Shown here in pieces: positions 502 through 25,521 of a stretch of 64,000 bases of DNA. The stretch spans positions 342,735 through 406,734 of the IMG/VR virus record IMGVR_UViG_3300044680_000280; one strand, given 5' to 3'. Under the pieces are notes generated by a model. It had not been told where the DNA came from, did no database searches, and was given only the letters and a program-made list of their open reading frames with translations. A program made the translations under genes and the position numbers. Position 1 is the first letter of the stretch, and every line of letters begins with the position of its first letter.

Positions 502-831
502 TTACGCGACTAGGGTTCCGCACCAGTAACAGTTTCGTCCGACGTCGTTGACTCGTTGGCAACTGGAGTTTGGGCACGGGGCCTCCCTCGGCGGGATGAG
601 CTTCCACTGTCCAGTAACCCTGGCCGTATGGTGCATGTACAAAACCCTACCACGGTGTCTTGGAGCGACATACTCCACCGGGGCCATCACCCACGAGTCC
701 TCCCCGGCATCGTTCTCTTCGTTCGGGCGGATCACGTAGCAATGGGCTCCGACGAGCATGTCCTTGATCGAAGCGGATGTGTTGTCGCTTCCAACGAATT
801 CCCAAACCTGCCCCACCCTCACGTCGGTCAT
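502..831 (-). CDS. hypothetical protein with C-terminal CPNxxCxxxNDxGxNCYWCG zinc ribbon
   Basis: C-terminal module shared with 19045..19578 and 25057..25521. Confidence 0.8.
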   Translation of the reverse strand: MTDVRVGQVWEFVGSDNTSASIKDMLVGAHCYVIRPNEENDAGEDSWVMAPVEYVAPRHRGRVLYMHHTARVTGQWKLIPPREAPCPNSSCQRVNDVGRNCYWCGTLVA

Positions 832-834
832 GGG

Positions 835-1422
835 TCAATATCCGCCACGAATGTGTTTCTGAAGGTCCAGGTCAAGAGCAATGCGAGTGAGGGCATCCGC
901 GTGGTGGAGAAACTCGTTTCTTCGGTCGAGCCTTCGCGCGGTTTCCTGATCCTCTTTATCAAAGTCATCGGCAACGTGCCGAGCCGCACTCCTCAGTTCT
1001 TCTGCTCGAGATCGAATGTATCGTACGACCGGATCTCCGAGACGAATCTCGATCTCTTCAGGTGATAGTCCCCCCGCGAGCATGGCAGCAATACGAGCTC
1101 GTCCATCGAGTCTGTTAAACGCCACACGAATGTTCGGGTGATCGGAGGCGAATCTCCGCATGTCTTGCACTTCGATACAAAAGCGCCAGCCTTTTTCCTC
1201 CTCATGGGTGGATGCCCGGGCACTCAGGTAGAAACCCAGGGCGGGCGGGAACACCGTTGGGTCGTCGGATGCGAGCACATTCACCGGGGTGTGCTCGTTG
1301 TTCGTGCTCAACAGAATGACACCCACGTGTATCGCCCCCATAAGGTCGAGTACGTTCGAGTACGTGGTGATGGTTTCTGGTTCGGGCATCGAGAGGTACT
1401 TCAGACACTCGCGGGTCAACAT
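835..1422 (-). CDS. hypothetical protein
   Basis: 195 aa; CGGTGTA motif 10 nt upstream of ATG. Confidence 0.75.
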   Translation of the reverse strand: MLTRECLKYLSMPEPETITTYSNVLDLMGAIHVGVILLSTNNEHTPVNVLASDDPTVFPPALGFYLSARASTHEEEKGWRFCIEVQDMRRFASDHPNIRVAFNRLDGRARIAAMLAGGLSPEEIEIRLGDPVVRYIRSRAEELRSAARHVADDFDKEDQETARRLDRRNEFLHHADALTRIALDLDLQKHIRGGY

Positions 1423-1633
1423 GCTCTGTTAATACACCGGGAGCCGTCGCTTCAGATGGTGTAAGAATGGGGTATGCGCATCATCGGGCGGATCGGATAC
1501 GCTGACCATCAAGATGCGAGAACCTCTCGGGGAGCTCTCGGACGAGCAGGTTGCGGCTCTTATGGCTCCGCGTACCGGTCAAGTGGGCGTTTCTGATTGA
1601 ACCTTGATCCCTTCCGTGCTCTATTGACCTCCC

Positions 1634-2002
1634 ATGAGCAGCACACCCATTGAGATACCCGTTGCCATTCGTAGGGTACGTTTCAATCCGTTACCCGGGG
1701 TATCTTTTCGCCTCACCATGTGGGAGACTCGCGAAAAGTCCCTCCTGGGGGGCAACACGATCAGTTACCGTCTCATGATGCACGTGACGGGGCATCCGGC
1801 CGTTGAGCTCTTCAATGGAACCCAGTTCTCCGTACTCAAACACACTACGGAGTCGGATGAGGCTCTGAGCCTTCTAATGTTTTACCTTGTGTTCGCGAAA
1901 GAGGCGAACCCCGCTACTGCGAAACATCACCAGGAATTCGTCGAAAAATACGCCGTCACCCTTTGGTCCGAGGTAGAGGACCGATTTGGAGGACTCCCGT
2001 GA
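1634..2002 (+). CDS. hypothetical phage protein
   Basis: TTGAAC-class motif upstream; first gene of an overlapping + strand run. Confidence 0.75.
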   Translation: MSSTPIEIPVAIRRVRFNPLPGVSFRLTMWETREKSLLGGNTISYRLMMHVTGHPAVELFNGTQFSVLKHTTESDEALSLLMFYLVFAKEANPATAKHHQEFVEKYAVTLWSEVEDRFGGLP

Positions 2003-2346
2003 TTGAGAGAGCTGTGGAACGAGTGCGTGTAGGGGCGGCCATTGGGACAGCGTACCTGTCCACCGGGGTTGCGTATCTGTCGTCCGGTCTGGCCAAGCTG
2101 GGGGTCGTTTCCCACGGGTACGCTTGCGGTAGGCACATGGACGCTATCGATGCCCACGAGCTGTGCCACGACTGGAATGGGACCACGCGGCACATCGAAC
2201 AGATGGCGCTGGAAGTCGAGCTTCAGAAGGCATGGGAACTCACCGAGGAGCTCCGCCTTCGGGAACGACGGTTCGGCCCCCTACCTGCTGACGAAGTCAA
2301 CCAGATGAAGGCTGAGTCCACCGTGCGGCTTTCGGGGTCCAAGTGA
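1999..2346 (+). CDS. hypothetical protein
   Basis: GTGA start/stop overlaps with both neighbours. Confidence 0.6.
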   Translation: MIERAVERVRVGAAIGTAYLSTGVAYLSSGLAKLGVVSHGYACGRHMDAIDAHELCHDWNGTTRHIEQMALEVELQKAWELTEELRLRERRFGPLPADEVNQMKAESTVRLSGSK

Positions 2347-2777
2347 GCGCGGCGCCCGGCTACTACGTGTCGGCTATAAGAGGAGAACTCGTTGCATTGC
2401 CCGCCGGACCGTTTGCAACTCATGCCGAGGCCATCGCATCCGTCGACAGTGTTCGAACGCGATGGGCGGATTTGGACCCGTCAACACACTTTGCGGCCTG
2501 GGGCACGTGCCGGGTTCGCGCGGATGGAGAGGCTGCTCCCGAGAAGCCGAAGCGCCGTGTGCGCCTGCCGCTGTTTGATCCGTTGCCGAGCAAAGGTCGA
2601 TTTCGCGTGTACGTGAACTCTATCGGCTCACTCTGTTGGCGCCCCGCTGGCGCCCCGATCCCCGATAACGGACGATGGGAAGAACTTGCACGCGTGAACA
2701 TGCCGCGTGGACGAGAAACCGACCTCAACGGCGTGTTTGCTGCATATGACGCGTTGCTTAGGGTGTACGCGTTATGA
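2343..2777 (+). CDS. hypothetical phage protein
   Basis: 144 aa, GTGA overlap; YYVS..GPF.TH.EA pattern. Confidence 0.7.
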   Translation: MSAAPGYYVSAIRGELVALPAGPFATHAEAIASVDSVRTRWADLDPSTHFAAWGTCRVRADGEAAPEKPKRRVRLPLFDPLPSKGRFRVYVNSIGSLCWRPAGAPIPDNGRWEELARVNMPRGRETDLNGVFAAYDALLRVYAL

Positions 2778-2837
2778 GTACGGATCTCTACTCTGGTGAG
2801 TGCAAGCATTCTTGTGCGTCAACCGGATAAGCATGGC

Positions 2838-2865
2838 TTGAACTTCTCGCTGGCCGGGCTGTACT
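2838..2865 (+). promoter_or_regulatory. class II promoter motif TTGAAC-N17/18-GTACT (representative copy; about 16 in window)
   Basis: recurs upstream of starts at 1634, 2888, 3435, 5060(-), 7264(-), 7787, 9446, 16873(-), 18351, 21930, 28968, 29777, 30259, 38487, 47372, 63299. Confidence 0.7.
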
Positions 2866-2887
2866 CCCCCCAAGGAAGAAAAAACGA

Positions 2888-3118
2888 ATGATTACATTTG
2901 CAGCCGTGATGTCGTGCGACCATCCTGAATGTGAAACGAAGGTTGAAGTTAAACTTTACCTCAGGATGAAGACTGGACGAGTCGGGTATGACGGAGGAGT
3001 GGGACGAGAAGTCCCAGAGCTGGGTTTTAATCACCCCTTAGGTTGGAGCGAGGAGCAGGACTGTTCCGGTCGGATGCGAAACTTTTGTAAGGAGCACGTC
3101 CAGGGGGAACGACGATGA
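2888..3118 (+). CDS. small Cys-containing hypothetical protein
   Basis: class II promoter and AAGGA upstream; CDHPEC...FCKEH. Confidence 0.7.
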   Translation: MITFAAVMSCDHPECETKVEVKLYLRMKTGRVGYDGGVGREVPELGFNHPLGWSEEQDCSGRMRNFCKEHVQGERR

Positions 3119-3396
3119 AGGCCGCCGACAAGATTTGGATCTACTACCAGTTTTTCACGAAGGAGCCCGCGTTCAAGGAGATCCTTCGTGATGATCCGAG
3201 GCTCGAATGGGACGCTCCGGGCACCCCTCCGGGCACAGTCCGTTACTCCCATCGAAAAGGGGGGAAGTGGACCTACGCCAACTTCGGCAACACCAAGCAG
3301 GAAGCCGCGGACAGCGCCAATCGTTACGATTTCGAAAAGATCGCGAAACTCGAAGCCGAGATCACTAGGATCAAGGCGAGACTCGTCAAGCCGTAA
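3115..3396 (+). CDS. hypothetical protein
   Basis: ATGA overlap with the previous gene. Confidence 0.7.
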   Translation: MKAADKIWIYYQFFTKEPAFKEILRDDPRLEWDAPGTPPGTVRYSHRKGGKWTYANFGNTKQEAADSANRYDFEKIAKLEAEITRIKARLVKP

Positions 3397-3434
3397 AGGT
3401 TGAACTTCCCTCACTCCAGCGCTGTACTACTCCC

Positions 3435-3794
3435 ATGCTCACCAACTTTTCGATCGGTCGCCGCTACCTTTGCACTCCAAAGGGTCGCGCCCACTTCTAC
3501 TTCACGATCCTCGGTCCCGGGCCGAACTACGCGGACAAGCCGTCGAAGACGCACAAACTGTGCCGCATCGACGTTCTCCCCGACCATCTCAACATGCCCG
3601 GCGGATCGTCCAACGGTTCCGTGGCGACCTACTCCCACTCACATTTGAAGAAATACGGGAAGCTCGTCGAGGTCAAGTCGCTCGAGGTGAAGCCTGGGGC
3701 CTTCTGTATGTACGCGGAGTATGTTACGCTCGAGGGTGAGACCGTCTCGATCAGTCTGGAGGGCGAGAACCGAGCCCCCGCGAGCCTCACATGA
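3435..3794 (+). CDS. hypothetical protein
   Basis: class II promoter directly upstream. Confidence 0.7.
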   Translation: MLTNFSIGRRYLCTPKGRAHFYFTILGPGPNYADKPSKTHKLCRIDVLPDHLNMPGGSSNGSVATYSHSHLKKYGKLVEVKSLEVKPGAFCMYAEYVTLEGETVSISLEGENRAPASLT

Positions 3795-3991
3795 AAACTC
3801 GAATGACCAAGGTCGACCGTACTGCCGCGTGGTCCAGGCTCGGTAAAGAGATCTCGCGCTGGCAGAAGCTCAGTGAAACGGACCTCTTTGAGGAGGTCAA
3901 AAGGGAATGGCCCAGCGTCGTCAGCGCGACGCGCGATGAGTGCCTACGATTTCTCGTGCTCAACTTTGTGTCGCGTCACTTCGACGCGTAG
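3791..3991 (+). CDS. hypothetical protein
   Basis: ATGA overlap. Confidence 0.6.
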   Translation: MKTRMTKVDRTAAWSRLGKEISRWQKLSETDLFEEVKREWPSVVSATRDECLRFLVLNFVSRHFDA

Positions 3992-4007
3992 TAGTCGGAG
4001 TCGGAGT

Positions 4008-4014
4008 CGGTGTA
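4008..4014 (+). promoter_or_regulatory. class I promoter motif YGGTGTA, 9-11 nt before the start codon (representative copy; about 60 in window)
   Basis: CGGTGTA-ctgataaggc-ATG; same spacing before dozens of genes on both strands. Confidence 0.8.
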
Positions 4015-4024
4015 CTGATAAGGC

Positions 4025-4273
4025 ATGGACGATCCTCACGTTGAGGTTTGGGTAAAGTGTCTCCCGTGCAACGGAACGGGTGACGAGCCCCATTTGCCTT
4101 TCGAGCAGTACAAGCCCTGGGAAGTACCGCTGGACATCATTGCGACCGGTCATCCACGTCCGTGCCTCCAGTGCAATGCTCATCACACTGGGAAGCATCC
4201 TGGACGAGTTATGATTCTGGTGCCGGTGTCTGAGCTCAAGCCCGCCGTGGACCGTGGGGTGGTCGAGGCATGA
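4025..4273 (+). CDS. small zinc-binding protein (CxxCxGxG...CxxC)
   Basis: class I motif; CLPCNGTG and CLQC. Confidence 0.7.
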   Translation: MDDPHVEVWVKCLPCNGTGDEPHLPFEQYKPWEVPLDIIATGHPRPCLQCNAHHTGKHPGRVMILVPVSELKPAVDRGVVEA

Positions 4274-4569
4274 AGCCCTGCCCCAACTGCGGCTCGACGA
4301 GCCCACGGCGCTTGCACGACCCGGACACGGGGGTCTGCAAGAACGAGTACGGTTGTCTCTCCCGCTGCTGCCGACGCCGCAAGGAAGAGGACGACAAGCG
4401 ATTCGGGGGCAAGCGGCGGGTGCAGTGCACCGCAACGACCGGACATCTGAGCATCACCTTCTGTGAGCTGGGAGAAGGGCACACGGGACTCCACCAACGC
4501 AATACGAAGCAGTGGGGAGGTAACTGCACGCACCCTCTGGCCGCCGCTCTCCACGCGGGGCTCGCGTAA
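4270..4569 (+). CDS. Cys/His-rich hypothetical protein
   Basis: ATGA overlap; several Cys/His clusters. Confidence 0.65.
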   Translation: MKPCPNCGSTSPRRLHDPDTGVCKNEYGCLSRCCRRRKEEDDKRFGGKRRVQCTATTGHLSITFCELGEGHTGLHQRNTKQWGGNCTHPLAAALHAGLA

Positions 4570-4577
4570 ACCCATAC

Positions 4578-5060
4578 CTACTTCCGAAGGGCTAGCTTCG
4601 TTCCCGTGGCGACCGAGTTAACGAAGATCAAGTACCCGAGAGCGACGTACGGCATCGCGTGAAGAATCTCGGGCATCGGGGTGATCAGGACGAGCTCGAT
4701 GAGTGCGACGAAACCGAGCGCCTTTCGCTTGCAGAAAAACGCACGAGCCGTCCACTCGTAGACCGTCGGGGCGCTGAAAAGCAGGGCTCCCGCGACGATG
4801 ACGAGGTAGGAGGCGAGGAGCGGCATCGGGGTCGTCGCCGTGATCGCCAGGTGGCTGATGCAGTAGGCAAACGACGGGACGACTGCTCCGAACGCCCCAC
4901 CCATTAGGGTAGCAAGGCAGTTCTCCGGGCGGCACGCAACCTGAATCTGCTCGACCACACCCATCGCATTGATTTCGGTCTTCGACCGCTTCGCGCTGAC
5001 CTTGCGGGCCGACTTCGGTGACTCTTCCTCGGGTCCAATGAGCTTCAGATTCGGGTTCAT
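4578..5060 (-). CDS. multi-pass membrane protein
   Basis: class II promoter plus AAGGAG RBS; about 4 hydrophobic segments. Confidence 0.75.
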   Translation of the reverse strand: MNPNLKLIGPEEESPKSARKVSAKRSKTEINAMGVVEQIQVACRPENCLATLMGGAFGAVVPSFAYCISHLAITATTPMPLLASYLVIVAGALLFSAPTVYEWTARAFFCKRKALGFVALIELVLITPMPEILHAMPYVALGYLIFVNSVATGTKLALRK

Positions 5061-5144
5061 CGTTGTCTCCTTGGGAATGAGTACAACGCGACAAGTGGGA
5101 AGGTTCAAACCCCAAATGGAGTGAATCGGTGTATACGCCTATTC

Positions 5145-5606
5145 ATGACGAAGGACGAACGAATTCAAGCTCTTTGCATCAGCCTCGCCAGCTTCATTGC
5201 TGAGATTGACACCAGTAGCATCAAGGTCGCGACCTATTTGGAACAGAGGTTGCGTCCGATTCTCTCCGAAGTAAGCAATGACCTGCTTGACCAAGTCGGG
5301 AACGACGGTCGGAAGTTGCTCGAGCCATCAGCGCTACCACCGGGCGACGTGGTGAACCCCGTGGACTGTCGCCATGGGAATTCCGAATCCGAATGTTGGG
5401 TGTGTGCTGACAGCCGTGCCGATGAGACCATTCAAAAACTCCGAGATTCTCTTATCTCTTCAAGGGAAACTCTGCTCGACTGCCATCGAGCCCTGAGAAG
5501 TCTGAAACCGTATCAAGCGATGCTCGTCGCCGAGCTCGAAGAGGCCTTCAAGAAGATCGATGAGATTCTCAGTGGGACTTGCGGAGGTCCACGCTCCGAG
5601 ATATAA
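5145..5606 (+). CDS. hypothetical protein
   Basis: class I motif 11 nt upstream. Confidence 0.7.
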   Translation: MTKDERIQALCISLASFIAEIDTSSIKVATYLEQRLRPILSEVSNDLLDQVGNDGRKLLEPSALPPGDVVNPVDCRHGNSESECWVCADSRADETIQKLRDSLISSRETLLDCHRALRSLKPYQAMLVAELEEAFKKIDEILSGTCGGPRSEI

Positions 5607-5734
5607 TCATGGGGATCCTCGGAAGATATTGGCGCCTTAGATCCGAAGGGGTTGTGCTGGGGCTGCGACCAAGCTTACTGGCACCCCGTGGGGTTGACCG
5701 ACCGTAACAAGTCGGCGGCCCCACGTTCTTTCCA

Positions 5735-6505
5735 TCAGAATTGCAGTTTCGGACTGTCGCCCGGGTCGTCGCCCGCTATCGGCTCATCGTTCAATATGCC
5801 TCTGGCGATGCATATATCCCAGAAGGCATACCAAACAGTTCGAGTCTCCGCGCGGACTGCATTCAAGGCGCGGAGAACAATGTTTTTGTCGTCCTCGTTT
5901 TCTGCCTTCTCGTAGATGTCTCGTAGATGTTGGATACTGGTATGGAGGACACCCAATCCTGACACCCAATCCACGTCCTGTTTGATATTTGAGTCGTCGG
6001 GTATCAACTTCGTCAGGGCCCAAAGGACACGGTAGATGTCCCCCGTTGAGAGGACGAATCGGTCAGGATCAGAAGAGTTCCACCGTTTCTCGAACTCGGT
6101 TTTCCATTCAGGAGGGGGGTAGAGAGGTGCTTCTGGCGCCCCTCGGAGAAGGAACTTCTTGAGGCTCGGGAACTCTTGAGCGAGCTTGCATACGCTTGCC
6201 CACTGTCGGCTCGTCGGAGCCCTCAGAACGCCATCGAGCGCCTCATTCAAGTGCTCAACCGGGATTCCGTGCTCAGTGGCGAAGTGAGCACACTGTCGGT
6301 CATTTGGATCACAATCCCAACGACGGCCTCGGATAATACGCTTGAGCTCAGTGGCAAGCGAGACGTTCGTGTAGGCGGCGATGTCGGTCGGAAGCGGGGG
6401 CTCGACGTAGACGTACGGTCTCTCTTCTTCCTCGAGAATGTGTTCCCACACCGACTTTTTCGGCTCCCGCATGGGAGCCTTTGCACGGCGCAAGCTGATT
6501 GCCAT
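5735..6505 (-). CDS. hypothetical protein with N-terminal KKSVWEHILEEE tag
   Basis: 256 aa; class I motif. Confidence 0.75.
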   Translation of the reverse strand: MAISLRRAKAPMREPKKSVWEHILEEEERPYVYVEPPLPTDIAAYTNVSLATELKRIIRGRRWDCDPNDRQCAHFATEHGIPVEHLNEALDGVLRAPTSRQWASVCKLAQEFPSLKKFLLRGAPEAPLYPPPEWKTEFEKRWNSSDPDRFVLSTGDIYRVLWALTKLIPDDSNIKQDVDWVSGLGVLHTSIQHLRDIYEKAENEDDKNIVLRALNAVRAETRTVWYAFWDICIARGILNDEPIAGDDPGDSPKLQF

Positions 6506-6527
6506 GCACCTATACGTACACCGATCC

Positions 6528-6923
6528 TCACGAGACGACTAGAACGGTTTTTGGGGCTAGTTTCCTGTCAACCGACACGTGCACGGCGCTGGGTGAACCG
6601 TCATCCATGAGCGATAAACACCCTAGGATGCCCCGACGGTTCAAGGCCGAGTCGACGACCATCTTGATCCGATGCCACGCGTACTGGCGGATGGCGGCGA
6701 AGTCCTCCGGGTACAGGGCGATTTGTATGGCCTCCGTAGGGATTCGGTTGATCAAATCGAGGACTTCGGGCGGGCACCTATTGTCCAGCTCTTTTTCCAG
6801 CTCTTGTATTCGATTCCACAAGAGAACTTCCTCTCGAGTGGCTTCGTGTTCTTCACAAGGTGAGCGGAAACCGACTCTTTCAATCCACCCCGTCGAGTCT
6901 TTGTAGTTGAAATCGAAACCCAC
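6528..6923 (-). CDS. hypothetical protein
   Basis: class I motif before GTG. Confidence 0.65.
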   Translation of the reverse strand: MGFDFNYKDSTGWIERVGFRSPCEEHEATREEVLLWNRIQELEKELDNRCPPEVLDLINRIPTEAIQIALYPEDFAAIRQYAWHRIKMVVDSALNRRGILGCLSLMDDGSPSAVHVSVDRKLAPKTVLVVS

Positions 6924-16658: not shown

Positions 16659-16660
16659 CC

Positions 16661-16873: not shown

Positions 16874-17054
16874 GAGTCGAATACAACGCAGGTAGTCGAA
16901 AGGTTCAAGAGTACGTGGCTAGGAGATTTTGCACAGGAGCTTGTTGGCTCCGTACAAGCCAGAGTAGGTCTGTCTCGGCGTACCGAGCATTCGTTTGAAG
17001 TGTAAGGTCGATGCTTACACGAGCACTTCCCCGCCACACCCCGCGCAACGTTTG

Positions 17055-17360
17055 TCAGGCATCCGGATTAGATACCTCAGACTTGAGTTTCGTCAAGAGT
17101 CGCTCGATTCCGAGGGCGATGTTGTCGTAAATGGGGCGCCTCATCGCTGGGTGCGGGGCGGTCCGACCGTTTTTCCAACGTTCGAAACTCGACACGCTCA
17201 AACCGAACCGTACTCTGAGGACCTTCTCCTCGTCAAATACCCTCAGTTCTACCATCCGGTTGATAAGTTCTCGAAAAGTATCAGAGCTGTGCGTGGGGGC
17301 CGCCTTCAGATCCTCCATGAGTTTCGTGAGTTCTGCGATACGGTTGGACACGGTAAACAT
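17055..17360 (-). CDS. XRE-like helix-turn-helix protein
   Basis: FGLSVSSFERWKNGRTAPHP. Confidence 0.6.
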   Translation of the reverse strand: MFTVSNRIAELTKLMEDLKAAPTHSSDTFRELINRMVELRVFDEEKVLRVRFGLSVSSFERWKNGRTAPHPAMRRPIYDNIALGIERLLTKLKSEVSNPDA

Positions 17361-17417
17361 TCTACTACACCAAGATTCTCGATGAGTCAAGACCTCAGCC
17401 GGTGTAACCTGGGAACT

Positions 17418-18152
17418 ATGGGCAACCCGCAAGACCGCATCATTTTCGCTTTGGACCTTCCCACCTACAAGGAAGCCGCCGGTTACGTTTCCGCTCTGCG
17501 GGAACACGTCGGCTGCTTCAAGGTGGGGCTCGAGCTTTTTATGGTTGATGGCCCTTTAATGGTTCACCATATTCAACACGTACACAAAAGGTCGGTCATG
17601 CTCGACCTGAAGTTTCACGATATCCCTGAAACCGTTGCGCGAGCCCTCGTCCAGGCGGGGGATATGGGCGTGCGGTTCGCCACGATTCACGTGCAGCAAA
17701 GAGCAACGATGAAGAAGGCTGTCACGGTGGCAAAGCAGTACGGCATCCAACTCCTCGCCGTGACAGTTCTGACGTCGATGACGGACGATGACCTTTTCGA
17801 CCTGGATATGTCGCCGCCGTTCCTTGGTTTTTTCCCCGGTGGAGTATCGAACCGTGTCGAACGTCTGGCAAAGCTTGCCTGGTCGGAGGGTGTCACGGGC
17901 TTCGTTTGCTCTCCCATGGAGGTGAAGCGGCTCCGTAACAGTTTGCCCAATGCTGTCCTCGTGACCCCAGGAGTGCGTCCCGCGGGTAGTGATGTCGGAG
18001 ACCAAAAACGAATCGGGACGCCGTCTCAAGCTATTTCTGACGGAGCAAACTACATCGTCGTAGGTCGTCCGATTCGAGATGCCGCCGATCCTGTCGCCGC
18101 CGCGGCTCTGATCGCAAAAGAGATCGACTTCGACTTGGTGGACTCCCCTTGA
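17418..18152 (+). CDS. pyrF: orotidine-5'-phosphate decarboxylase
   Basis: IFALD, FKVGLELF, LDLKFHDIPETV, VTVLTS, VTPGVRP, DQKR, VVGRPI; class I motif sets the start. Confidence 0.96.
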   Translation: MGNPQDRIIFALDLPTYKEAAGYVSALREHVGCFKVGLELFMVDGPLMVHHIQHVHKRSVMLDLKFHDIPETVARALVQAGDMGVRFATIHVQQRATMKKAVTVAKQYGIQLLAVTVLTSMTDDDLFDLDMSPPFLGFFPGGVSNRVERLAKLAWSEGVTGFVCSPMEVKRLRNSLPNAVLVTPGVRPAGSDVGDQKRIGTPSQAISDGANYIVVGRPIRDAADPVAAAALIAKEIDFDLVDSP

Positions 18153-18695: not shown

Positions 18696-18699
18696 CCCC

Positions 18700-19044: not shown

Positions 19045-19578
19045 TCATGGTCCTACCACCTTCGTCCCGCACCAGTAGCAGTTCTTTCCGATGTCGTTTT
19101 TCCGTTGACAGCTAGAGTTCGGACAAAGAGCCTCCTTCGGGGCTCCTGTCGTTGCTGTCGAGTCGCCAGCCTGAACGGTGAGTTGCCACCAATTGTAGAA
19201 GTCGAATCGTTCGATCTGCGTTGTGCCGACGGGCTCTACTTCAATGGTCGGTTCCCCCAGCCGATTACCTAAGGTCACTAAGTGCCTACGAAAGGTGAAC
19301 TTCTGACCTTGTGACCAAATCCTTGACCCCGTGCTCACTACGATGGTGTCCCCATCCTTGATGGGTGTGAGGTCCTTCTCGTGAAAGGTGTGCATGGACG
19401 TGTTCGTTGGATCCACACTGAACCGTATAGACCATAGTCCCGACGGGGGAGTACCTCCGATCTGGTCGTACACGACTCCAAGCCAGGACGAGGTTGGTAC
19501 CCGGACGGGATCCCCTATTTTGGGGACGTAAGAAGCAGCGGCTACGGGATACATCCCGCCAAACGGGTACCCGAACAA
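19045..19578 (-). CDS. KOW/SH3-like protein with C-terminal zinc-ribbon module
   Basis: ends ALCPNSSCQRKNDIGKNCYWCGTKVVGP. Confidence 0.75.
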   Translation of the reverse strand: MFGYPFGGMYPVAAASYVPKIGDPVRVPTSSWLGVVYDQIGGTPPSGLWSIRFSVDPTNTSMHTFHEKDLTPIKDGDTIVVSTGSRIWSQGQKFTFRRHLVTLGNRLGEPTIEVEPVGTTQIERFDFYNWWQLTVQAGDSTATTGAPKEALCPNSSCQRKNDIGKNCYWCGTKVVGP

Positions 19579-19579
19579 C

Positions 19580-19828
19580 TCAGCCCTCTTTGGTCTTCAG
19601 TTTCGAAGCGTTGTCGTCGAGGAAGCCGCGAATCTCGTCGGCCATGTCGAGCACCTTCTCCCACTGCTCCTTGTAGAGCGTGACGGGGAAGCGCCCGAGG
19701 CCGTAGAGCGAGACGCCGCCCTTCTCGGAAACCTTGAGGCTGATTGCTCGCTTCGGTTGAGCCTTGAGCTTCTCGTTCTCAGCTCGGAGTCGATTGAGTT
19801 CGGCTTGGACTTCGGGATCGAGGGTCAT
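19580..19828 (-). CDS. conserved hypothetical protein (KVSEKGGVSLYGLGRFPVTLY family)
   Basis: class I motif; pattern I recognise from bacterial hypothetical proteins. Confidence 0.8.
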   Translation of the reverse strand: MTLDPEVQAELNRLRAENEKLKAQPKRAISLKVSEKGGVSLYGLGRFPVTLYKEQWEKVLDMADEIRGFLDDNASKLKTKEG

Positions 19829-19893
19829 GCCTTTTTATTACACCGTTTTTTTACACTCGCCGCAGGTTTTTGGCTCGGTGTACGCTATTGGGT

Positions 19894-20385
19894 ATGCCGG
19901 AGTGGCTTTCTAGCCTGCTCAGATTATTCACCGATAATGGGGTCAGGAACGGGATCGTCTCGGATCTAGCCAGTCGGTGGGGCGTTCTGTCTGACGAACA
20001 GTGGGTGAGACTGGACTACCGAGTCCGGTCGGTTTGCATCCGTGAAGCGGTGAGTCACACGAACGGTATTACGATTCTCGCTGTTTGTGAGACCGCGGCA
20101 ACTCTATGTGACCGTAGAGGTCGAGGTGAGCCCGTCACTGATGCCGAATGGTTGGACGCCCGCCGCAAGGCGTCGGCGGTGACAGGGAGTCCGGCGGTGG
20201 TGGCGTTGGCGTCGACGTTGGCAGCATCGAATTCGATGCCATGTGCATGGTTGGCGGCGAGTTCGGCATCGTCGTTGACCCGCATTGCCCAAGCCACCTA
20301 CGACCTCATCGACCAAGAAATCGATTTGACGCGAGCCGCCAGACCCAAAGCCATGACGATCTGGGAGCACATAATGGAGAATTGA
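19894..20385 (+). CDS. Ala-rich helical protein with C-terminal MTIWEHIMEN tag
   Basis: class I motif. Confidence 0.7.
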   Translation: MPEWLSSLLRLFTDNGVRNGIVSDLASRWGVLSDEQWVRLDYRVRSVCIREAVSHTNGITILAVCETAATLCDRRGRGEPVTDAEWLDARRKASAVTGSPAVVALASTLAASNSMPCAWLAASSASSLTRIAQATYDLIDQEIDLTRAARPKAMTIWEHIMEN

Positions 20386-20407
20386 CCCTAGAACCTGCGG
20401 TCGCAGT

Positions 20408-20632
20408 CTAGAAGCAGTCCTCGTTGCTGTACTCGATGCTGTCGGTTCCCATATCGTCGGCGGAGACGGGGGCGCGCCTTGAGGTGTGGCGAACGTGGGC
20501 CGCGGCGGGGGGTGCCGCCTCGCAAACCGCGTGACGGACGGGGTTGCCCTTCACCCATTCGATTTTTTCGCCGACACGGACGCGGCGGTTGCAGACCTTG
20601 CAGAACGAAGCGAACTTTGCTGTGAGGACCAT
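20408..20632 (-). CDS. small zinc-finger protein (CxxC...HxxC)
   Basis: GAGGGAG RBS; AKFASFCKVC..GEKI..HAVC. Confidence 0.7.
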   Translation of the reverse strand: MVLTAKFASFCKVCNRRVRVGEKIEWVKGNPVRHAVCEAAPPAAAHVRHTSRRAPVSADDMGTDSIEYSNEDCF

Positions 20633-20717
20633 TTTTCTGTTCTCCCTCTCACTCATATAGAACGGACCGTTCCGGAGGAACTTGAGAAAAATTCGGCGTT
20701 GCGGTGTAAGGGACCGC

Positions 20718-21290
20718 ATGCTCTCGGATCAAACGAAGGAAGCCATTCTCACCGAGTATCTCAAAAATGGTGGGCGTCACCAAAAGCCGCCTGAGACCTC
20801 ATTTGGACCGAAAACTGGGTTCCGTTGTACGTGCGGCGGCCCCCTTTACCAAAGGTACGACCTCTTCGAGTCGCGACTTCCCCCGCGCAAAGGTCCTCGT
20901 CGTAGCAAAAACCGTCGGATCGCCAAAAAGCAACTCAAGAGGTGGCTCGAGGAAGAATGCATGCTTTATCGGTTCGAGTTCGCGTTGAACCTTCTACGAG
21001 GCCCCCGCGGGTATATCTGCGGCTCTTGTTACAGAAACGTTGGATTTTACGAGGCCATCGGCCGCAACACCTTCATTGTTGAGCAACTCCCGGACGGCGC
21101 TCTGCCGATTTACGACCGAGATCCTGATGTTACGGCGTTCGATCCCGCCTCAGGACAAGCTCTTACGGTAGAGAACGTCCTCCCCGGCTCCCAAACCGTA
21201 GAGGTCCTCGATCGTTTGGATCCGATACCCCTCCCCAAAGAGGAAGGTACGGATCTCCAGGTTCCCAACCTTGGCGTCGACGAGGACTGA
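20718..21290 (+). CDS. zinc-motif protein with a segment resembling a large-phage major capsid protein
   Basis: class I motif; GRNTFIVEQLPDGALPIYDRDPDVTA. Confidence 0.6.
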   Translation: MLSDQTKEAILTEYLKNGGRHQKPPETSFGPKTGFRCTCGGPLYQRYDLFESRLPPRKGPRRSKNRRIAKKQLKRWLEEECMLYRFEFALNLLRGPRGYICGSCYRNVGFYEAIGRNTFIVEQLPDGALPIYDRDPDVTAFDPASGQALTVENVLPGSQTVEVLDRLDPIPLPKEEGTDLQVPNLGVDED

Positions 21291-21632
21291 ACGGACGCCG
21301 AACTCACGGGCGCCCTCAACCTCGACGTTCCGGACGAGGAAGGAAGCGATGTGCCGACCCCGCATGTCGGGACGGACCGTGATGTTTTTAATCTCGAGCG
21401 CGGTCGGTTCTGCCATGTGCCGCTGGTAGATTACGGCTCCGATGACATTCCCTCTTGAAAGAGCCACGAGAGCCCGTTTGGTCTCATCCTTGAGCTGGGA
21501 GTGGACCTTTTGGAGCCATCCGTCGAAGTCTGGGTAGTCCTCGTGTGGGATCCAGAGTCGCGGTCCCCGCAGGTAGTTCAAGATCTCATCCGCCCGCCGG
21601 TCCATCCCGTCGCTGGTGAACAGGAATTCCAT
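21150..21632 (-). CDS. GNAT family N-acetyltransferase
   Basis: EIKNITVRPDMRGRHIASFLV acetyl-CoA motif A; N..IRTFL..EGY. Confidence 0.85.
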   Translation of the reverse strand: MEFLFTSDGMDRRADEILNYLRGPRLWIPHEDYPDFDGWLQKVHSQLKDETKRALVALSRGNVIGAVIYQRHMAEPTALEIKNITVRPDMRGRHIASFLVRNVEVEGAREFGVRSVLVDAKVGNLEIRTFLFGEGYRIQTIEDLYGLGAGEDVLYRKSLS

Positions 21633-21635
21633 GGC

Positions 21636-21869
21636 TCAGACCTTCCGCTTTTTTGCCGTCTTTTTCTTCGCCTGCTTCTTTGGCGCCGGGGCCTTGATCT
21701 CGGTAGCCGCAATCAACCAGTCGAGATGTGACAACTCGGCGTTGTTCACGAGCATATTGTAGGCAATATGCTCGGCGAGCTCCGTAGGTGTGTAGAGCTT
21801 GTAAAAAATGCTCCTCCACTGGAGCTCGACTTCGCACTCGAAGTTTACGAGAAACGTTCGCATCCCCAT
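21636..21869 (-). CDS. small protein with Lys/Ala-rich tail
   Basis: class I motif. Confidence 0.55.
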   Translation of the reverse strand: MGMRTFLVNFECEVELQWRSIFYKLYTPTELAEHIAYNMLVNNAELSHLDWLIAATEIKAPAPKKQAKKKTAKKRKV

Positions 21870-21929
21870 GCTCCTTCTATTACACCGTTTGAACTTCGGG
21901 CAACCCCGGGTCGTACTGGAGAGGAACAC

Positions 21930-22127
21930 ATGGCCACCAAACCCGTCTTCCCGATTGGCGCCGCCGTCTACATCGATGGTCGCGATGCCGCGATCGTTCG
22001 AGCCGCCTTTCCCGAGGGCTCGTCATCTTTTCTGTTCCCGCACTACAAGGTGCACGTCATCGGCGGCGACAGAAACATGGCCGTTTCGATGTCCCGCGTT
22101 GGGGTGAAACGGAAGGAATCGGTGTAA
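21930..22127 (+). CDS. small KOW/SH3-like protein
   Basis: class II promoter plus GAGG RBS. Confidence 0.7.
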   Translation: MATKPVFPIGAAVYIDGRDAAIVRAAFPEGSSSFLFPHYKVHVIGGDRNMAVSMSRVGVKRKESV

Positions 22128-22136
22128 CTGTACAGA

Positions 22137-22445
22137 ATGGCCCACGTGTGGACTACAACGCTGCCCGACAAGACTACAGTGTGGGTGTATTCGCGCTTCT
22201 ACCATCAGGGTGTCCACTACAACGGGACCTGCTGTCAATACTGCGGAGCCCAAAAGTGCACCGTTCCGGGGAGCCGTGCGGGTCTTGTTCGCACCCTCTA
22301 CATCACATTCAAATACGGCAAACCGTATCGTTTTAGTCCCAAAGCCCCGATCTGCATTCGAGAGGACGAGACCTTTGCCGTTGAGGTACCCAAACCTCTC
22401 CCGAACAGGATGACGGTCTATGACCATCTGCTGAGCCCGAGCTAA
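22137..22445 (+). CDS. hypothetical protein with C-terminal RMTVYDHLLSPS tag
   Basis: class I motif. Confidence 0.7.
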   Translation: MAHVWTTTLPDKTTVWVYSRFYHQGVHYNGTCCQYCGAQKCTVPGSRAGLVRTLYITFKYGKPYRFSPKAPICIREDETFAVEVPKPLPNRMTVYDHLLSPS

Positions 22446-22491
22446 AGTTTCTCAGGGGACTTCCGTTCCATTGAGTAAGAGGGTACGAACG

Positions 22492-22704
22492 ATGCGAGAC
22501 TTCACCAACATCTCCCTGCACAGCCCCCGCATGATGGAGCACCACGAGACGGATCCTCGGTTCGAGCGGTTCGTCAAGCTCGCCAGCAGCATGACCGCCT
22601 TTCGGGTCTCGGTGCACGAGGTGTCCAGCGCCCTCAGGTCGATGGGCGCCAACGAGGGCGAGATTTTCATCGTCATCCACGCTGTGAAAATACTGGAGTC
22701 TTAG
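22492..22704 (+). CDS. hypothetical protein
   Basis: GAGGG RBS. Confidence 0.6.
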   Translation: MRDFTNISLHSPRMMEHHETDPRFERFVKLASSMTAFRVSVHEVSSALRSMGANEGEIFIVIHAVKILES

Positions 22705-22731
22705 CCTGCTCATCCGGTGTAAGGTTCTCTT

Positions 22732-23004
22732 ATGAACCGCACCGTTGTCGCTGCCATCCTCTGCGCCCTTTCCGTCGCCGCCTGCGAGGGTCCCCAGACG
22801 CAGCACATTTTTCGCATCCGAGCTCCGTCCGACGTCGTCTACGTTCCCATCGTCGACCACTCGAGGGAGCACGACAAGGCACTGCAAGAAGCCATCGATA
22901 AGGCCGTTCGGGCACAGGAAGTGCAAGATCTCCGGCAAGAAGTTCGTTCCGAGTTGCTCGATATCCCGAACGGCCCGTCGACCCGCTCGCTCACTCAGCA
23001 ATAA
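22732..23004 (+). CDS. putative lipoprotein
   Basis: signal peptide with lipobox VAAC; class I motif. Confidence 0.65.
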   Translation: MNRTVVAAILCALSVAACEGPQTQHIFRIRAPSDVVYVPIVDHSREHDKALQEAIDKAVRAQEVQDLRQEVRSELLDIPNGPSTRSLTQQ

Positions 23005-23213
23005 CCGTGTAGGCTTACGTGTGCCTAAATTCACCATCCAAGTCCGTCAGTCTCCCCTCATACCTGACATCCGGTGCAGGGGCTGCAACGTTCGGCCACC
23101 TCGAGACGTGACAGGATGGTTTATCGCAGCCGTCCATCTGATTCTCTGCCCCGATTGTCGTAAGAAACCGCTCAAACGTCATCATACGTAGCATTCTGGT
23201 GTACGGATAAAAC

Positions 23214-24575
23214 ATGCGAACCTCCTTCTGTGGGCGACTTCGAGACCGTGCTGAGGCCTTTTGGCAAAAGCACAAGAACTGGGAAGCCCCGCCGATCCCG
23301 AAGAACGTTCGACGAGTCGTGGGTGCGGTTCAAACTTTGCTCCCATTCCTGGCGGACAGGGAGGACACCCTTATCCAAAAGACGCTGAAGGGCATCTCTC
23401 TCGCTGAAGCCGTATACCGCATAGTGGAGGGGAACCGCCTGATTTCCGAGTATTCGGCGTACCTAGAACAGTGGGATTTGGTCCAGTCGTCAAACCGTAA
23501 CCTTGCCCAACTGCTCTCTCAGTCGAAGATCTTGGAGATGCTTCCCTGCAATGAGATCCCGCTTTCCCACGGTGAGGCCAAATTCTGGGAGATTAATTCC
23601 GAGCAGGGGAAGTTTCTACTTGGAATTGGCGAGTACAACTCCAGCCTCGCTTATCCGGAGAATTTCGACGTACCAGGACTCCTGAACAGCCTCTGGAGCT
23701 GGTACGGGAACTGTATAACGATAAGTGTCCCTAAAAGGGGACACGGTAATCTGAGTTTGGAGTCCTTCCAAGAGCACCACGGGGAAATCCTCGGGAGCGC
23801 AAAGGCCACGTACGAACACTTCCTCTCGCAGCATCGCCGCTTTAAGGCGAATGGTAAGTCACGAACTTACCTCTTCTACGGACCCCCCGGCACCGGAAAG
23901 AGCACCTTTTCTCGTAGACTGGCCTTGGAAACGAGCTCCCGCGTGCTCATCATCGACGCAACCTCCATCTCTTTTTGGGGGTGCGACGAACTTCTCTACC
24001 TGCTATCAGCTCTTCAACCGGAGTTTGTTCTGCTGGACGACATTGATCGTGCTTCGAGTTCCATGTTTCTGCCGCTCCTCGAAAGGGTCAAACAAGAGGT
24101 GCCGGAAACGTCGTTCGTAATCACGGTCAACGATGTCTCGAAGCTCGACAAGGCACTGTTTCGACCCGGTCGGATCGATACCGTGCATGAATTTCTTTCT
24201 CCGGTGGAGGACGACCGCCGTGAAGTCATCTTGGGTTATCTCAAGCAGAGTCTTCAAATCGTGGACAAGGAGACCCTGGAATTCCTAGTCAAAAGTACGG
24301 AAGGAATGTCTCAAGACTACCTCAGAGAGCTCGTTCTACGCCTCGACTACGAGGATGTGCCGAGCGCCCTCCTTTCTGTCATGAATCTGTGGAATCTTTC
24401 AGGCGGGAAATCTTCGAACAGCGCACCGGTTCCGGTCGGGTCTTCGTCAGAGCCAGAAGAGTCAGAGTCGGAGCCAAAGTCGGATAGACAACCACCGGTA
24501 AATATGACCAAAAGCACCGTTTCCTGGCGGTCTGTAAAAGATGGCTCAGTTTCGTCATACCCGATTGCCCGTTGA
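23214..24575 (+). CDS. AAA+ family ATPase
   Basis: Walker A GPPGTGKS, Walker B LLDDID, SRH LDKALFRPGRID; class I motif. Confidence 0.9.
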   Translation: MRTSFCGRLRDRAEAFWQKHKNWEAPPIPKNVRRVVGAVQTLLPFLADREDTLIQKTLKGISLAEAVYRIVEGNRLISEYSAYLEQWDLVQSSNRNLAQLLSQSKILEMLPCNEIPLSHGEAKFWEINSEQGKFLLGIGEYNSSLAYPENFDVPGLLNSLWSWYGNCITISVPKRGHGNLSLESFQEHHGEILGSAKATYEHFLSQHRRFKANGKSRTYLFYGPPGTGKSTFSRRLALETSSRVLIIDATSISFWGCDELLYLLSALQPEFVLLDDIDRASSSMFLPLLERVKQEVPETSFVITVNDVSKLDKALFRPGRIDTVHEFLSPVEDDRREVILGYLKQSLQIVDKETLEFLVKSTEGMSQDYLRELVLRLDYEDVPSALLSVMNLWNLSGGKSSNSAPVPVGSSSEPEESESEPKSDRQPPVNMTKSTVSWRSVKDGSVSSYPIAR

Positions 24576-24584
24576 GTCTCAATT

Positions 24585-25037
24585 ATGAGTAAACTTCACC
24601 ACATTTCCCGCAGGTTCGGTTCCCAAGACTCAGCGCGAAGAGCCGTAAGCGCCCTCGTTTCCTCCCTCCTGGATTACGTTGAGGTTCATGCAACGGGGGA
24701 CGTTCGCAACGGTCGTCTAGCACCATTTACGGTCTCTGTGACCGTCGATAACCTGGACGATAAAGTCCTTGCCGTGTCCCTTATGGGAGCGTTCGGCGCT
24801 CTTTCTCCGACGATGGCGGAGGACTCGGCGATCGGGTTCGAGGATTCGAACTGGCACCCCCGAGTCCTGACCTGGGGAGATGAGAAATGGGGAAGCGTGG
24901 ACCCGACAGTCATGATTCCCTCGTCCATTCGGGTCTACAGCGACGGTTCAGCTCTGGCGGTCCATGACGGGGAGGTGAGTAAACCGTTCCCGTCCCTGTC
25001 CGAACTCTCAACAACATATCGCATCGACGTCCATTAG
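24585..25037 (+). CDS. hypothetical protein
   Basis: 150 aa directly after the ATPase. Confidence 0.6.
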   Translation: MSKLHHISRRFGSQDSARRAVSALVSSLLDYVEVHATGDVRNGRLAPFTVSVTVDNLDDKVLAVSLMGAFGALSPTMAEDSAIGFEDSNWHPRVLTWGDEKWGSVDPTVMIPSSIRVYSDGSALAVHDGEVSKPFPSLSELSTTYRIDVH

Positions 25038-25056
25038 CTCGGTGTATACTAAGGGG

Positions 25057-25521
25057 ATGGTGTATCAGCCTAGGTCGGGAGATATTGTTCGGAGTGTCAT
25101 ACCCGATTGCCCGTTGAGCGCTCGAATTGGTGTGGTGCGGTCGCTGACTCCGGGTGGGTCGTACAACGTTGCCTTTTCGAATACCTCCGTGGCCGTGTAT
25201 ACAGCCGATGAGATCGTCCCGCTCGTGGAAGGGGTAAATCGAGTCGAGCTGATCGGCGGTGTAAGCGCCATGGGTACTTATGCTGGGAAGTACCTACATA
25301 GTCCGGTGCACGGAATCTCCATCGACTGGGACCAGCACGGACGTGGAACTTTTCTGTTCGTCAACTCCGTACAAGCGTGTGATTGGGATCGTCTCAGACT
25401 CGTTGACAAAGTTGGTATGTCGATGACAGCCCCGAGGGAGATCCCGTGCCCAAACAAGAGCTGCCAACGGAAGAACGATATCGGACGAAACTGCTACTGG
25501 TGCGGAACCCTCGTAGTATAA
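25057..25521 (+). CDS. KOW/SH3-like protein with C-terminal zinc-ribbon module
   Basis: class I motif; ends IPCPNKSCQRKNDIGRNCYWCGTLVV. Confidence 0.8.
   Translation: MVYQPRSGDIVRSVIPDCPLSARIGVVRSLTPGGSYNVAFSNTSVAVYTADEIVPLVEGVNRVELIGGVSAMGTYAGKYLHSPVHGISIDWDQHGRGTFLFVNSVQACDWDRLRLVDKVGMSMTAPREIPCPNKSCQRKNDIGRNCYWCGTLVV

What the first reader, a model, noticed from the sequence alone, without database searches (positions are those of the whole stretch)
502..25521. Portable ~90-bp C-terminal zinc-ribbon cassette on three different proteins
Seen: 502..831(-), 19045..19578(-) and 25057..25521(+) have dissimilar KOW/SH3-like N-termini but end in P[RK]ExxCPNxSCQRxND[VI]G[RK]NCYWCGTxV. Copies 1 and 3 remain visibly alike in DNA (CCGAGGGAG..CCGTGCCCAAAC..TGCCAACG..CGGACGAAACTG.TACTGGTGCGGAACCCT). 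Inference: a second appended address module, spread by recombination, parallel to the helical tag. Together they suggest a modular tail-tagging strategy for accessory proteins.
Basis: partly seen in the sequence, partly recalled or inferred. Interest (0 to 1): 0.65.

Follow-up and report, generated by a model that had tools for sequence, protein, structure and literature searches.

The report
Shared zinc-ribbon tail on phage proteins
Three small genes of an uncultured 400-kb peat phage end in the same 28-residue four-cysteine zinc-ribbon; two are old duplicates, the third has an unrelated front half and probably got its tail by recombination, and what the tail does is unknown.

Summary
ORFs 502-831(-), 19045-19578(-) and 25057-25521(+) all end in P[RK]ExxCPNxSCQRxND[VI]G[RK]NCYWCGTxV. 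These are the only three copies in the 406,734-bp virus record, a tailed jumbo phage from peat.

"Three different proteins" is only partly right. Genes 2 and 3 also share a homologous N-terminal Tudor/KOW/SH3-like barrel (SW 64 against 24±4.8 in shuffles), so they are old paralogues. Their middle parts are not detectably alike.

Gene 1's front half matches neither, as protein or as DNA. Yet its tail is the one closest to gene 3's: 69/84 nt, 17 of 23 identical codons against 8.7 expected (P=1.5e-4), site patterns 14:6:5. That conflict points to 3'-end exchange or gene conversion.

An exhaustive HMM search (1.84 billion representatives) and DNA-pattern scans found five more proteins with this tail. 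All carry it at the extreme C-terminus, on unrelated front parts, and two are next to phage replication genes.

The tail matches no Pfam or PHROG family. Its cysteine spacing and a confident AlphaFold model resemble RanBP2/NZF zinc ribbons, but that support is weak (Z about 2).

The "address tag" idea is untested. A zinc-held docking knob for a shared partner is my best guess. Interest is modest.

The parts
502..831 (-). Gene 1 (P0001, 109 aa): unrelated head plus ribbon tail
   Evidence: Translation. The ESM Atlas holds this exact sequence. The head shows no similarity to genes 2 or 3 at protein level (SW 21 against 25 in shuffles) or DNA level.
508..591 (-). Gene 1 zinc-ribbon tail (residues 81-108, PREAPCPNSSCQRVNDVGRNCYWCGTLV)
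   Evidence: AlphaFold pLDDT is 95-96 over residues 80-109.
592..831 (-). Gene 1 head (residues 1-80); possibly a small beta-barrel, low confidence
   Evidence: AlphaFold pLDDT is below 50. The Atlas model resembles DUF1653-like small proteins (TM 0.47 by query, 0.71 by target).
19045..19578 (-). Gene 2 (P0002, 177 aa, TTG start 5 nt after AGAGGG): barrel, variable middle, ribbon
   Evidence: Called as 177 aa in two public assemblies. The Atlas model resembles tandem KOW/Tudor/SH3 domains at TM about 0.35.
19057..19140 (-). Gene 2 zinc-ribbon tail (residues 147-174)
   Evidence: and 103 (inverted repeat I1 with the gene 3 tail).
19351..19530 (-). Gene 2 N-terminal barrel (residues 17-76), homologous to the gene 3 barrel
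   Evidence: SW score 64 against shuffle mean 24.1, sd 4.8, 0 of 2000 shuffles reaching it.
19144..19350 (-). Gene 2 middle part (residues 77-145), not detectably similar to the gene 3 middle
   Evidence: SW 22 against 21.4 in shuffles.
25057..25521 (+). Gene 3 (P0003, 154 aa): barrel, variable middle, ribbon. It lies between a 150-aa ORF after an AAA ATPase and an IscU/NifU_N gene that starts 9 nt downstream
25063..25233 (+). Gene 3 N-terminal Tudor/KOW/SH3-like barrel (residues 3-59)
   Evidence: AlphaFold pLDDT 74-82 over residues 1-57. VIA-align Z 7-8.2 to PWWP, Tudor, NdhS and KOW domains. Many small phage KOW-like proteins appear in BFVD.
25234..25428 (+). Gene 3 middle part (residues 60-124), fold not predicted
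   Evidence: pLDDT below 50. No similarity to the gene 2 middle.
25432..25515 (+). Gene 3 zinc-ribbon tail (residues 126-153)

Best explanation
The three ORFs are real small accessory genes of an uncultured tailed jumbo phage. Each ends in a 28-30-residue Cys4 zinc ribbon that no Pfam or PHROG family covers. Its signature is E-x2-C-x(2,4)-C-x-[RK]-x-[NK]-D-x-G-x2-C-[YW]-W-C-G followed by 1-6 residues and the stop.

Shown: genes 2 and 3 are old paralogues (barrel, variable middle, ribbon). Gene 1 has an unrelated head.

Inferred: gene 1's ribbon is nearest to gene 3's at the DNA level, so it was acquired or overwritten by recombination at the 3' end. A C-terminal cassette needs only one in-frame junction because it brings its own stop codon.

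Inferred, and weaker: the ribbon is a metal-held docking knob of RanBP2/NZF-like topology that contacts one common partner, either single-stranded nucleic acid or a host or phage protein, while the beta-barrel heads supply the variable function. Between paralogues 2 and 3 the tail keeps 22/28 residues, including surface residues, while the barrel keeps about 30% and the middle nothing. That asymmetry is what a conserved interaction surface would give.
For: - Motif and copy number.
- Coding constraint, with differences at third codon positions.
- Homology of the gene 2 and gene 3 barrels.
- Gene 1 head unrelated.
- Closer DNA ancestry of the gene 1 and gene 3 tails: 17/23 identical codons against 8.7 expected, P=1.5e-4. 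Gene 1 versus gene 2 gives 10/21 against 8.3, which shows the null model is calibrated. Site patterns are 14:6:5, P=0.016.
- Portability: the tail sits at the extreme C-terminus of P0004, P0005, P0007, P0008 and the L021 ORF, on unrelated heads. P0008 lies next to RNA ligase, Pol III alpha and a capsid-like gene. P0005 lies next to a phage family-A DNA polymerase.
- Fold: the gene 1 tail has pLDDT 95-96. It superposes on the RBM5 RanBP2 finger 2lk1_A (rmsd 1.9 Å over 28 residues), Npl4 NZF 1q5w_A (2.3 Å over 30) and TAB2 NZF 7e62_J (2.5 Å over 28).
- The spacing C-x4-C-x3-N-x5-C-x2-C is close to the RanBP2 consensus, which I take from established knowledge.
- RanBP2-type fingers bind ssRNA at micromolar affinity (PMC6384913).
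- Phage identity: terminase, portal and tail fibre.
Against: - There is no functional data at all: no RNA runs and no sequence variants in the three peat runs.
- The structural Z scores for the ribbon are only 2.1-2.8, which is expected for 30 residues but not discriminating.
- No HMM links the tail to RanBP2, NZF, Zn_Ribbon_1 or DZR.
- The recombination inference rests on 84 nt.
- Basic charge of the tail is not conserved in P0005 or L021, which weakens a general nucleic-acid-binding reading.
- Residues invariant across the eight proteins are mostly structural, so a partner shared by the whole family is not required.
Confidence: 0.5

Rival explanations
1. Ordinary paralogue family. All three genes descend from one ancestral small-barrel-plus-ribbon gene. 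The heads diverged beyond recognition while the metal-binding tail stayed fixed, and no cassette ever moved.
For: - Genes 2 and 3 are demonstrably paralogues whose middle parts have already lost all similarity.
- Gene 1's head may also be a small beta-barrel (Atlas model).
- P0007 from another metagenome has the same barrel-plus-ribbon layout in 80 aa.
- P0001 and P0002 land on the same two top Atlas feature clusters.
Against: - The tail tree groups gene 1 with gene 3 (14:6:5 sites; codon sharing P=1.5e-4), while the heads group gene 2 with gene 3.
- At the synonymous divergence seen between the gene 1 and gene 3 tails, even neutrally evolving heads should keep detectable DNA similarity. None is seen: local score 8 against 10.6 in codon shuffles.
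- Tails also occur on helical and larger non-barrel heads elsewhere.
Confidence: 0.2
2. Address tag. The ribbon is a sorting signal read by one receptor. It would send different cargo proteins to a common place, such as the capsid for co-injection or a phage-made compartment.
For: - The tail always sits at the extreme C-terminus, in 8 of 8 proteins.
- Surface residues are highly conserved among the three copies within this phage.
Against: - No candidate receptor and no localisation or virion data.
- A related 435-kb phage lacks both the tail and the three genes, so no conserved sorting machinery is implied.
- Only three cargoes in more than 400 kb.
- A folded metal domain is an unusual sorting signal (my own judgement).
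Confidence: 0.1
3. Redox or iron site. The Cys4 knuckles bind Fe in a rubredoxin-like way rather than Zn, and gene 3 works with the IscU scaffold encoded 9 nt downstream.
For: - Gene 3 is directly followed by a strong NifU_N/IscU gene (E 2.8e-53).
- The window also encodes the Fe-S enzyme NadA.
- Gene 3's barrel resembles the ferredoxin-binding NdhS among many other barrels (Z 7.2-7.8, 22-25% identity).
Against: - Genes 1 and 2 have no such neighbours.
- The NdhS match is tied with dozens of Tudor and KOW hits.
- The nine-residue spacing between the two knuckles is typical of zinc ribbons.
- Adjacency alone is weak evidence.
Confidence: 0.05
4. Not a protein feature. The 84-nt similarity is a repeated DNA or RNA element that happens to lie in open frames.
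For: The copies form an 81-nt inverted repeat at DNA level.
Against: - Differences concentrate at third codon positions.
- The peptide is conserved at 79-86%, while synonymous sites between gene 2 and the other two are at or near the level codon bias alone predicts.
- Relatives in other metagenomes keep the peptide, not the DNA.
Confidence: 0.01

Closest known systems
RanBP2-type / NZF zinc fingers (Pfam zf-RanBP PF00641; for example ZRANB2, RBM5, Npl4, TAB2)
   Same: An autonomous Cys4 zinc ribbon of about 30 residues made of two knuckles. Spacing is C-x(2,4)-C-x3-N-...-C-x2-C with a conserved Asn. The predicted fold superposes at 1.9-2.5 Å over 28-30 residues. These fingers serve as small docking modules for ssRNA, ubiquitin or Ran (PMC6384913 for RNA).
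   Different: No HMM match. One residue fewer between the Asn and the third Cys. It lacks the W-x-C tryptophan and the NZF T-F/hydrophobic ubiquitin motif. It has its own C-[YW]-W-C-G and N-D-x-G signatures. It is phage-borne and always at the extreme C-terminus.
Prokaryotic zinc-ribbon families Zn_Ribbon_1 (PF13240) and DZR (PF12773)
   Same: CPxC...CxxCG-type knuckles appended to many unrelated proteins. The Atlas feature search lists DZR/Zn_Ribbon_1 clusters as weak look-alikes (scores 0.79-0.81).
   Different: No HMM match at E up to 10. The first knuckle is mostly C-x4-C. The signature between the knuckles is distinctive.
Lineage-specific zinc-ribbon expansions in jumbo phages (about 35 copies in Bacillus phage G; Iyer et al. 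2021, PMC7824862)
   Same: A small zinc-ribbon module multiplied within one jumbo phage, with unknown function. The authors suggest transcription factors or structural roles.
   Different: Only three copies here, fused to beta-barrel heads. I made no sequence comparison with the phage G ribbons, which are not in hand.
C-terminal cassette exchange in polymorphic toxin systems (PMC3482391)
   Same: New combinations arise by recombination that replaces the 3' end of a gene (analogy only; the paper appeared).
   Different: No standalone spare cassettes in this genome, no immunity genes and no toxin domain. In those systems the exchanged tip is the variable part; here it is the constant part.

Membership tests
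zf-RanBP / NZF (PF00641) | Match to the family HMM at or near the gathering score | tested here: not met
   No Pfam hit for the whole proteins at E<=1 or for seven isolated tails at E<=10. The PDB profile search found only eL40, at E 0.31.
zf-RanBP / NZF (PF00641) | Consensus W-x-C-x(2,4)-C-x3-N-x6-C-x2-C (from established knowledge) | tested here: not met
   C-x(2,4)-C-x3-[NK] is present, but the next loop is x5 and there is no W-x-C (alignment). The family's W lies between Cys3 and Cys4 instead.
zf-RanBP / NZF (PF00641) | Two-knuckle zinc-ribbon fold | tested here: inconclusive
   The confident model (pLDDT 95-96) aligns to 2lk1_A, 1q5w_A and 7e62_J over nearly their full lengths at rmsd 1.9-2.5 Å, but with Z of only 2.1-2.2.
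Zn_Ribbon_1 / DZR (PF13240, PF12773) | HMM match | tested here: not met
   Only weak language-model look-alikes, with scores below 0.9.
SH3-like small beta-barrel (Tudor/KOW/PWWP class), heads of genes 2 and 3 | Five-stranded barrel fold | tested here: met
   Gene 3 residues 1-60: pLDDT 74-82 and Z 7-8.2 to Tudor, PWWP, NdhS and KOW domains. Gene 2 follows by homology and from the Atlas model.
KOW motif (PF00467) | HMM match | tested here: not met
   No Pfam hit. The resemblance is at fold level only.
   Genes 2 and 3 share the barrel and the tail but not the middle part. Gene 1 shares only the tail.
Metal-binding ribbon | Stoichiometric Zn (or Fe) bound by the four Cys | not testable with these tools
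   The four Cys are invariant in all eight proteins. The identity of the metal needs chemistry.

The most novel reading that the evidence does not exclude
The ribbon is a portable docking or addressing signal specific to phages. One receptor, either a phage or host protein or a defined RNA, reads the same 28-residue knob on several different cargo heads. Phages would then retarget accessory proteins simply by swapping a 90-bp 3' cassette.
Probability: 0.1. Interest if true: 0.7.

Novelty: new variant of a known kind. Interest (0 to 1): 0.3.

Why it matters
Zinc ribbons are among the most often shuffled small domains, so a shared ribbon is not surprising in itself.

What is new is a sharply defined and very rare subtype. 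I found eight proteins: seven in an exhaustive search of representatives of about 15 billion predicted proteins, and one more by a DNA-pattern scan of metagenome contigs. It is absent from Pfam and PHROGs, is always at the extreme C-terminus, lies in phage contexts wherever the contig shows one, and here shows a small but measurable trace of 3'-end exchange between unrelated genes.

If the ribbon proves to bind one defined partner, it would be a compact 28-residue handle for studying how jumbo phages wire orphan accessory proteins into a common pathway.

Tried and rejected
- Near-identity search of phage records: no match.
- Word-index protein searches with P0003, with its tail region, and with the 7-protein alignment: only proteins already in hand.
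- Pfam and PHROGs on the three proteins, on the tails and on neighbouring genes: nothing consistent.
- IMG/VR scans with tail alignments: one false hit, L003, which aligns only to the linker, then none.
- DNA pattern for NDxGxxC[YW]WCG: in IMG/VR, two out-of-frame chance hits inside a 2497-aa gene. In metagenomes, 23 hits of which only L021 is real.
- Related 435-kb phage found through the AAA ATPase (33% identity): no tail and no homologue of any of the three genes. The genes are therefore not conserved in the one relative I could reach.
- Paralogues of the heads elsewhere in the genome: none.
- Read laying on three peat runs: all pieces over this phage are 100% identical, so no dN/dS could be computed, and no listed run is on record as RNA.
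- Foldseek against BFVD with the gene 1 model: nothing below E 0.37. The model is poor outside the tail.
- Complex prediction was not used. I claim no specific binding pair, and adjacency to IscU alone does not justify a job.
- No alternative genetic code was used or needed.
- P0006 and P0009 from the HMM search are low-complexity repeat proteins, not members.
Full report
**What the window is.** The window is the last 64 kb of a single-contig virus record of 406,734 bp with 55% G+C. IMG/VR labels it "provirus, 85% complete". The same DNA lies on a 463,523-bp JGI contig and a 231,823-bp Logan contig, both 100% identical over the 20 kb compared. It also occurs in three peat metagenome runs. The genome encodes a large terminase, a portal and a tail-fibre protein, plus a RecD-like helicase, an NAD-dependent ligase and a class II ribonucleotide reductase. 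It is therefore a tailed jumbo phage. No close relative exists among deposited phages.

**Checking the observation.**
- P0001 (109 aa) ends in PREAPCPNSSCQRVNDVGRNCYWCGTLVA.
- P0002 (177 aa) ends in PKEALCPNSSCQRKNDIGKNCYWCGTKVVGP.
- P0003 (154 aa) ends in PREIPCPNKSCQRKNDIGRNCYWCGTLVV.

Pairwise BLASTP of the shared part gives E values from 6e-18 to 7e-16. A six-frame regex, a protein HMM and a DNA HMM each find exactly these three copies in the whole genome and no decayed fourth copy.

The shared DNA is 84 nt long. It starts at the Pro codon before [RK]-E and stops at the Val two to four codons before the stop codon. Nothing upstream or beyond the stop aligns. Identities by codon position are 24/23/13, 24/25/20 and 24/22/15 of 28, which is the signature of a peptide under purifying selection. 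P0002 and P0003 appear among the genes called on the two public contigs of this phage, and the ESM Atlas holds the sequences of P0001 and P0002.

**Are these three different proteins?** Not quite. BLASTP of the N-terminal parts alone was non-significant. Smith-Waterman scoring against shuffles tells a different story for one pair. Residues 17-76 of P0002 and 3-59 of P0003 score 64, against a shuffle mean of 24.1 with sd 4.8, and none of 2000 shuffles reach that score. Genes 2 and 3 are therefore paralogues. Their middle parts (P0002 77-145, P0003 60-123) show no similarity (22 against 21.4).

Gene 1's head matches neither the barrel nor the middle of the others. This holds at protein level (18-21 against 23-25) and at DNA level (8-9 against 10.5). 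The heads have no further paralogue anywhere in the genome.

On structure, AlphaFold gives a confident five-stranded barrel for P0003 residues 1-57 (pLDDT 74-82). That barrel matches PWWP, Tudor, NdhS and KOW domains at Z 7-8.2 and many small uncharacterised phage proteins. The Atlas model of P0002 resembles tandem KOW/Tudor/SH3 arrays at TM about 0.35. Gene 1's head is poorly predicted; its Atlas model weakly resembles DUF1653-like small proteins.

**Did the cassette move?** I asked whether the tails share synonymous codons more often than the genome's codon usage predicts.

| Pair | Identical codons | Expected | P |
|---|---|---|---|
| Gene 1 vs gene 3 | 17 of 23 | 8.7 | 1.5e-4 |
| Gene 2 vs gene 3 | 13 of 21 | 8.9 | 0.05 |
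| Gene 1 vs gene 2 | 10 of 21 | 8.3 | 0.29 |

The last row shows that the null model is calibrated. Counting variable sites in the tail, 14 group genes 1 and 3 together, 6 group genes 2 and 3, and 5 group genes 1 and 2 (P=0.016 against one third).

So the tail tree pairs gene 1 with gene 3, while the heads pair gene 2 with gene 3 and leave gene 1 unrelated. At the modest synonymous divergence between the gene 1 and gene 3 tails, even neutrally drifting heads should still align as DNA, and they do not. The simplest reading is that gene 1 received a gene-3-like 3' end, or had its own overwritten by one. Genes 2 and 3 arose by an older whole-gene duplication. The evidence is real but thin, because it rests on 84 nt.

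**Is the tail portable beyond this phage?** An exhaustive HMM search of 1.84 billion cluster representatives with the three tails returned four more genuine members besides the three queries:
- P0004, 96 aa, with a helical head.
- P0005, 62 aa.
- P0007, 80 aa, with a barrel-like head beginning MAYSVGDRVRMYD.
- P0008, 204 aa, AT-rich.

A DNA-pattern scan of metagenome contigs added one more: the L021 ORF of at least 227 aa, ending CATCGKPNDVGCTCWWCGNRST.

In all eight proteins the ribbon is followed by only 1-6 residues. P0008 lies beside RNA ligase, Pol III alpha and a capsid-like gene. P0005 lies beside a phage family-A DNA polymerase. IMG/VR holds no other copy. A 435-kb distant relative of this phage has neither the tail nor the three genes. 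The module is thus rare, phage-associated wherever the context can be read, strictly C-terminal, and found on unrelated heads. This supports "portable module" in the general sense.

**What kind of ribbon is it?** Invariant positions are a Glu three residues before Cys1, the four Cys, [RK] two residues after Cys2, D, W and the final G. No Pfam or PHROG model matches the proteins or the isolated tails. A PDB profile search gives only a non-significant eL40 hit.

AlphaFold predicts the gene 1 tail at pLDDT 95-96 as two beta-hairpin knuckles. A full scan of 48,161 PDB representatives aligns it over nearly the whole length of three fingers: the RBM5 RanBP2 finger (2lk1_A, 1.9 Å over 28 residues), the Npl4 NZF (1q5w_A, 2.3 Å over 30) and the TAB2 NZF (7e62_J, 2.5 Å over 28). 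All have Z about 2.1-2.2. The spacing C-x4-C-x3-N-x5-C-x2-C is one residue short of the RanBP2 consensus and lacks its W-x-C. I therefore describe it as RanBP2/NZF-like in shape, not as a member of that family.

**How it most likely works.** This part is inference. Within the paralogous pair of genes 2 and 3, the tail keeps 22 of 28 residues. Over the same span of time the barrel keeps about 30% and the middle part nothing. The kept tail residues include surface ones, so the constraint looks functional rather than only structural.

RanBP2-type ribbons are docking knobs for ssRNA, ubiquitin or Ran (PMC6384913). Small Tudor/KOW barrels commonly bind nucleic acids or peptides. Iyer et al. noted lineage-specific zinc-ribbon expansions in jumbo phages and guessed at transcription-factor or structural roles (PMC7824862).

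My best guess is a zinc-held knob that contacts one common partner, either nucleic acid or protein, with variable heads. A rubredoxin-like iron site linked to the IscU gene 9 nt downstream of gene 3 is a minor rival.

**Verdict.** The tail is a new, narrowly defined variant of the zinc-ribbon kind, and interest is modest.

Noticed in passing
window 24554-24576 and 25096-25118: An exact 23-nt direct repeat (GTCATACCCGATTGCCCGTTGAG). One copy spans the stop codon of the AAA ATPase gene. The other lies in a different frame inside gene 3, where it encodes VIPDCPLS, exactly where gene 3 has a 5-residue insertion relative to its paralogue gene 2. The two copies bracket the 150-aa ORF P0011 and the start of gene 3. 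This may be a footprint of illegitimate recombination. The chance expectation is about 3e-7 (my rough estimate, not a tool result).
   Followed up: partly
window 19588-19744, inside ORF 19580-19828(-) (P0010, 82 aa), immediately upstream of gene 2: Many other contigs in the peat runs match this stretch at about 85-90% identity, with differences every third base. It is therefore a small protein (…KGGVSLYGLGRFPVTLYKEQW…) that is widespread in that community. It has no significant Pfam or PHROG match.
   Followed up: partly
window 25531-25917(+), 55330-56343(+), 16995-18152(+), 21150-21632(-), 27818-28429(-): This arm holds a cluster of auxiliary metabolic genes: IscU/NifU_N (E 2.8e-53), quinolinate synthase NadA (E 3.5e-118), OMP decarboxylase PyrF, a GNAT acetyltransferase and a phosphoribosyltransferase. 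An Fe-S scaffold together with an Fe-S enzyme in one phage is notable.
   Followed up: no
window 20661-21290(+) versus genome 165095-166021(-): This ORF shares two short segments with the N-terminal part of a 308-aa protein encoded 200 kb away; one is 81% identical over 31 aa (E 4e-12). A Cys-rich insert (CTCGG…CGSCY) lies between them. It looks like a partial duplicate with an inserted metal-binding loop. One public gene call includes it and the other does not.
   Followed up: partly
window 19873-19887 and 25037-25051: The motif GCTCGGTGTAYRCTA occurs twice, against 0.22 expected. Each copy lies just upstream of a start codon: gene 3, and the 171-aa ORF 19870-20385, which itself has a 45%-identical paralogue at genome 316170-316691. 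It may be a shared promoter or leader.
   Followed up: partly
window 24885-25034 (C-terminus of P0011) versus genome 300591-300848(+): A second case of a shared C-terminal stretch. The last 48 aa of the 150-aa ORF upstream of gene 3 are 33% identical (E 3e-6) to the C-terminus of an 85-aa ORF elsewhere in the genome.
   Followed up: no
window 54-488(-) (P0013), directly downstream of gene 1: This ORF begins MTTPIECPNCG…, a different zinc-knuckle motif placed at the N-terminus. No family match.
   Followed up: no
whole record G000: IMG/VR classes the record as a provirus at 85% completeness. Its parent contig is 463,523 bp, and the record encodes terminase, portal and tail fibre. The "provirus" trimming may be an artefact, and the true genome may be about 460 kb.
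   Followed up: no
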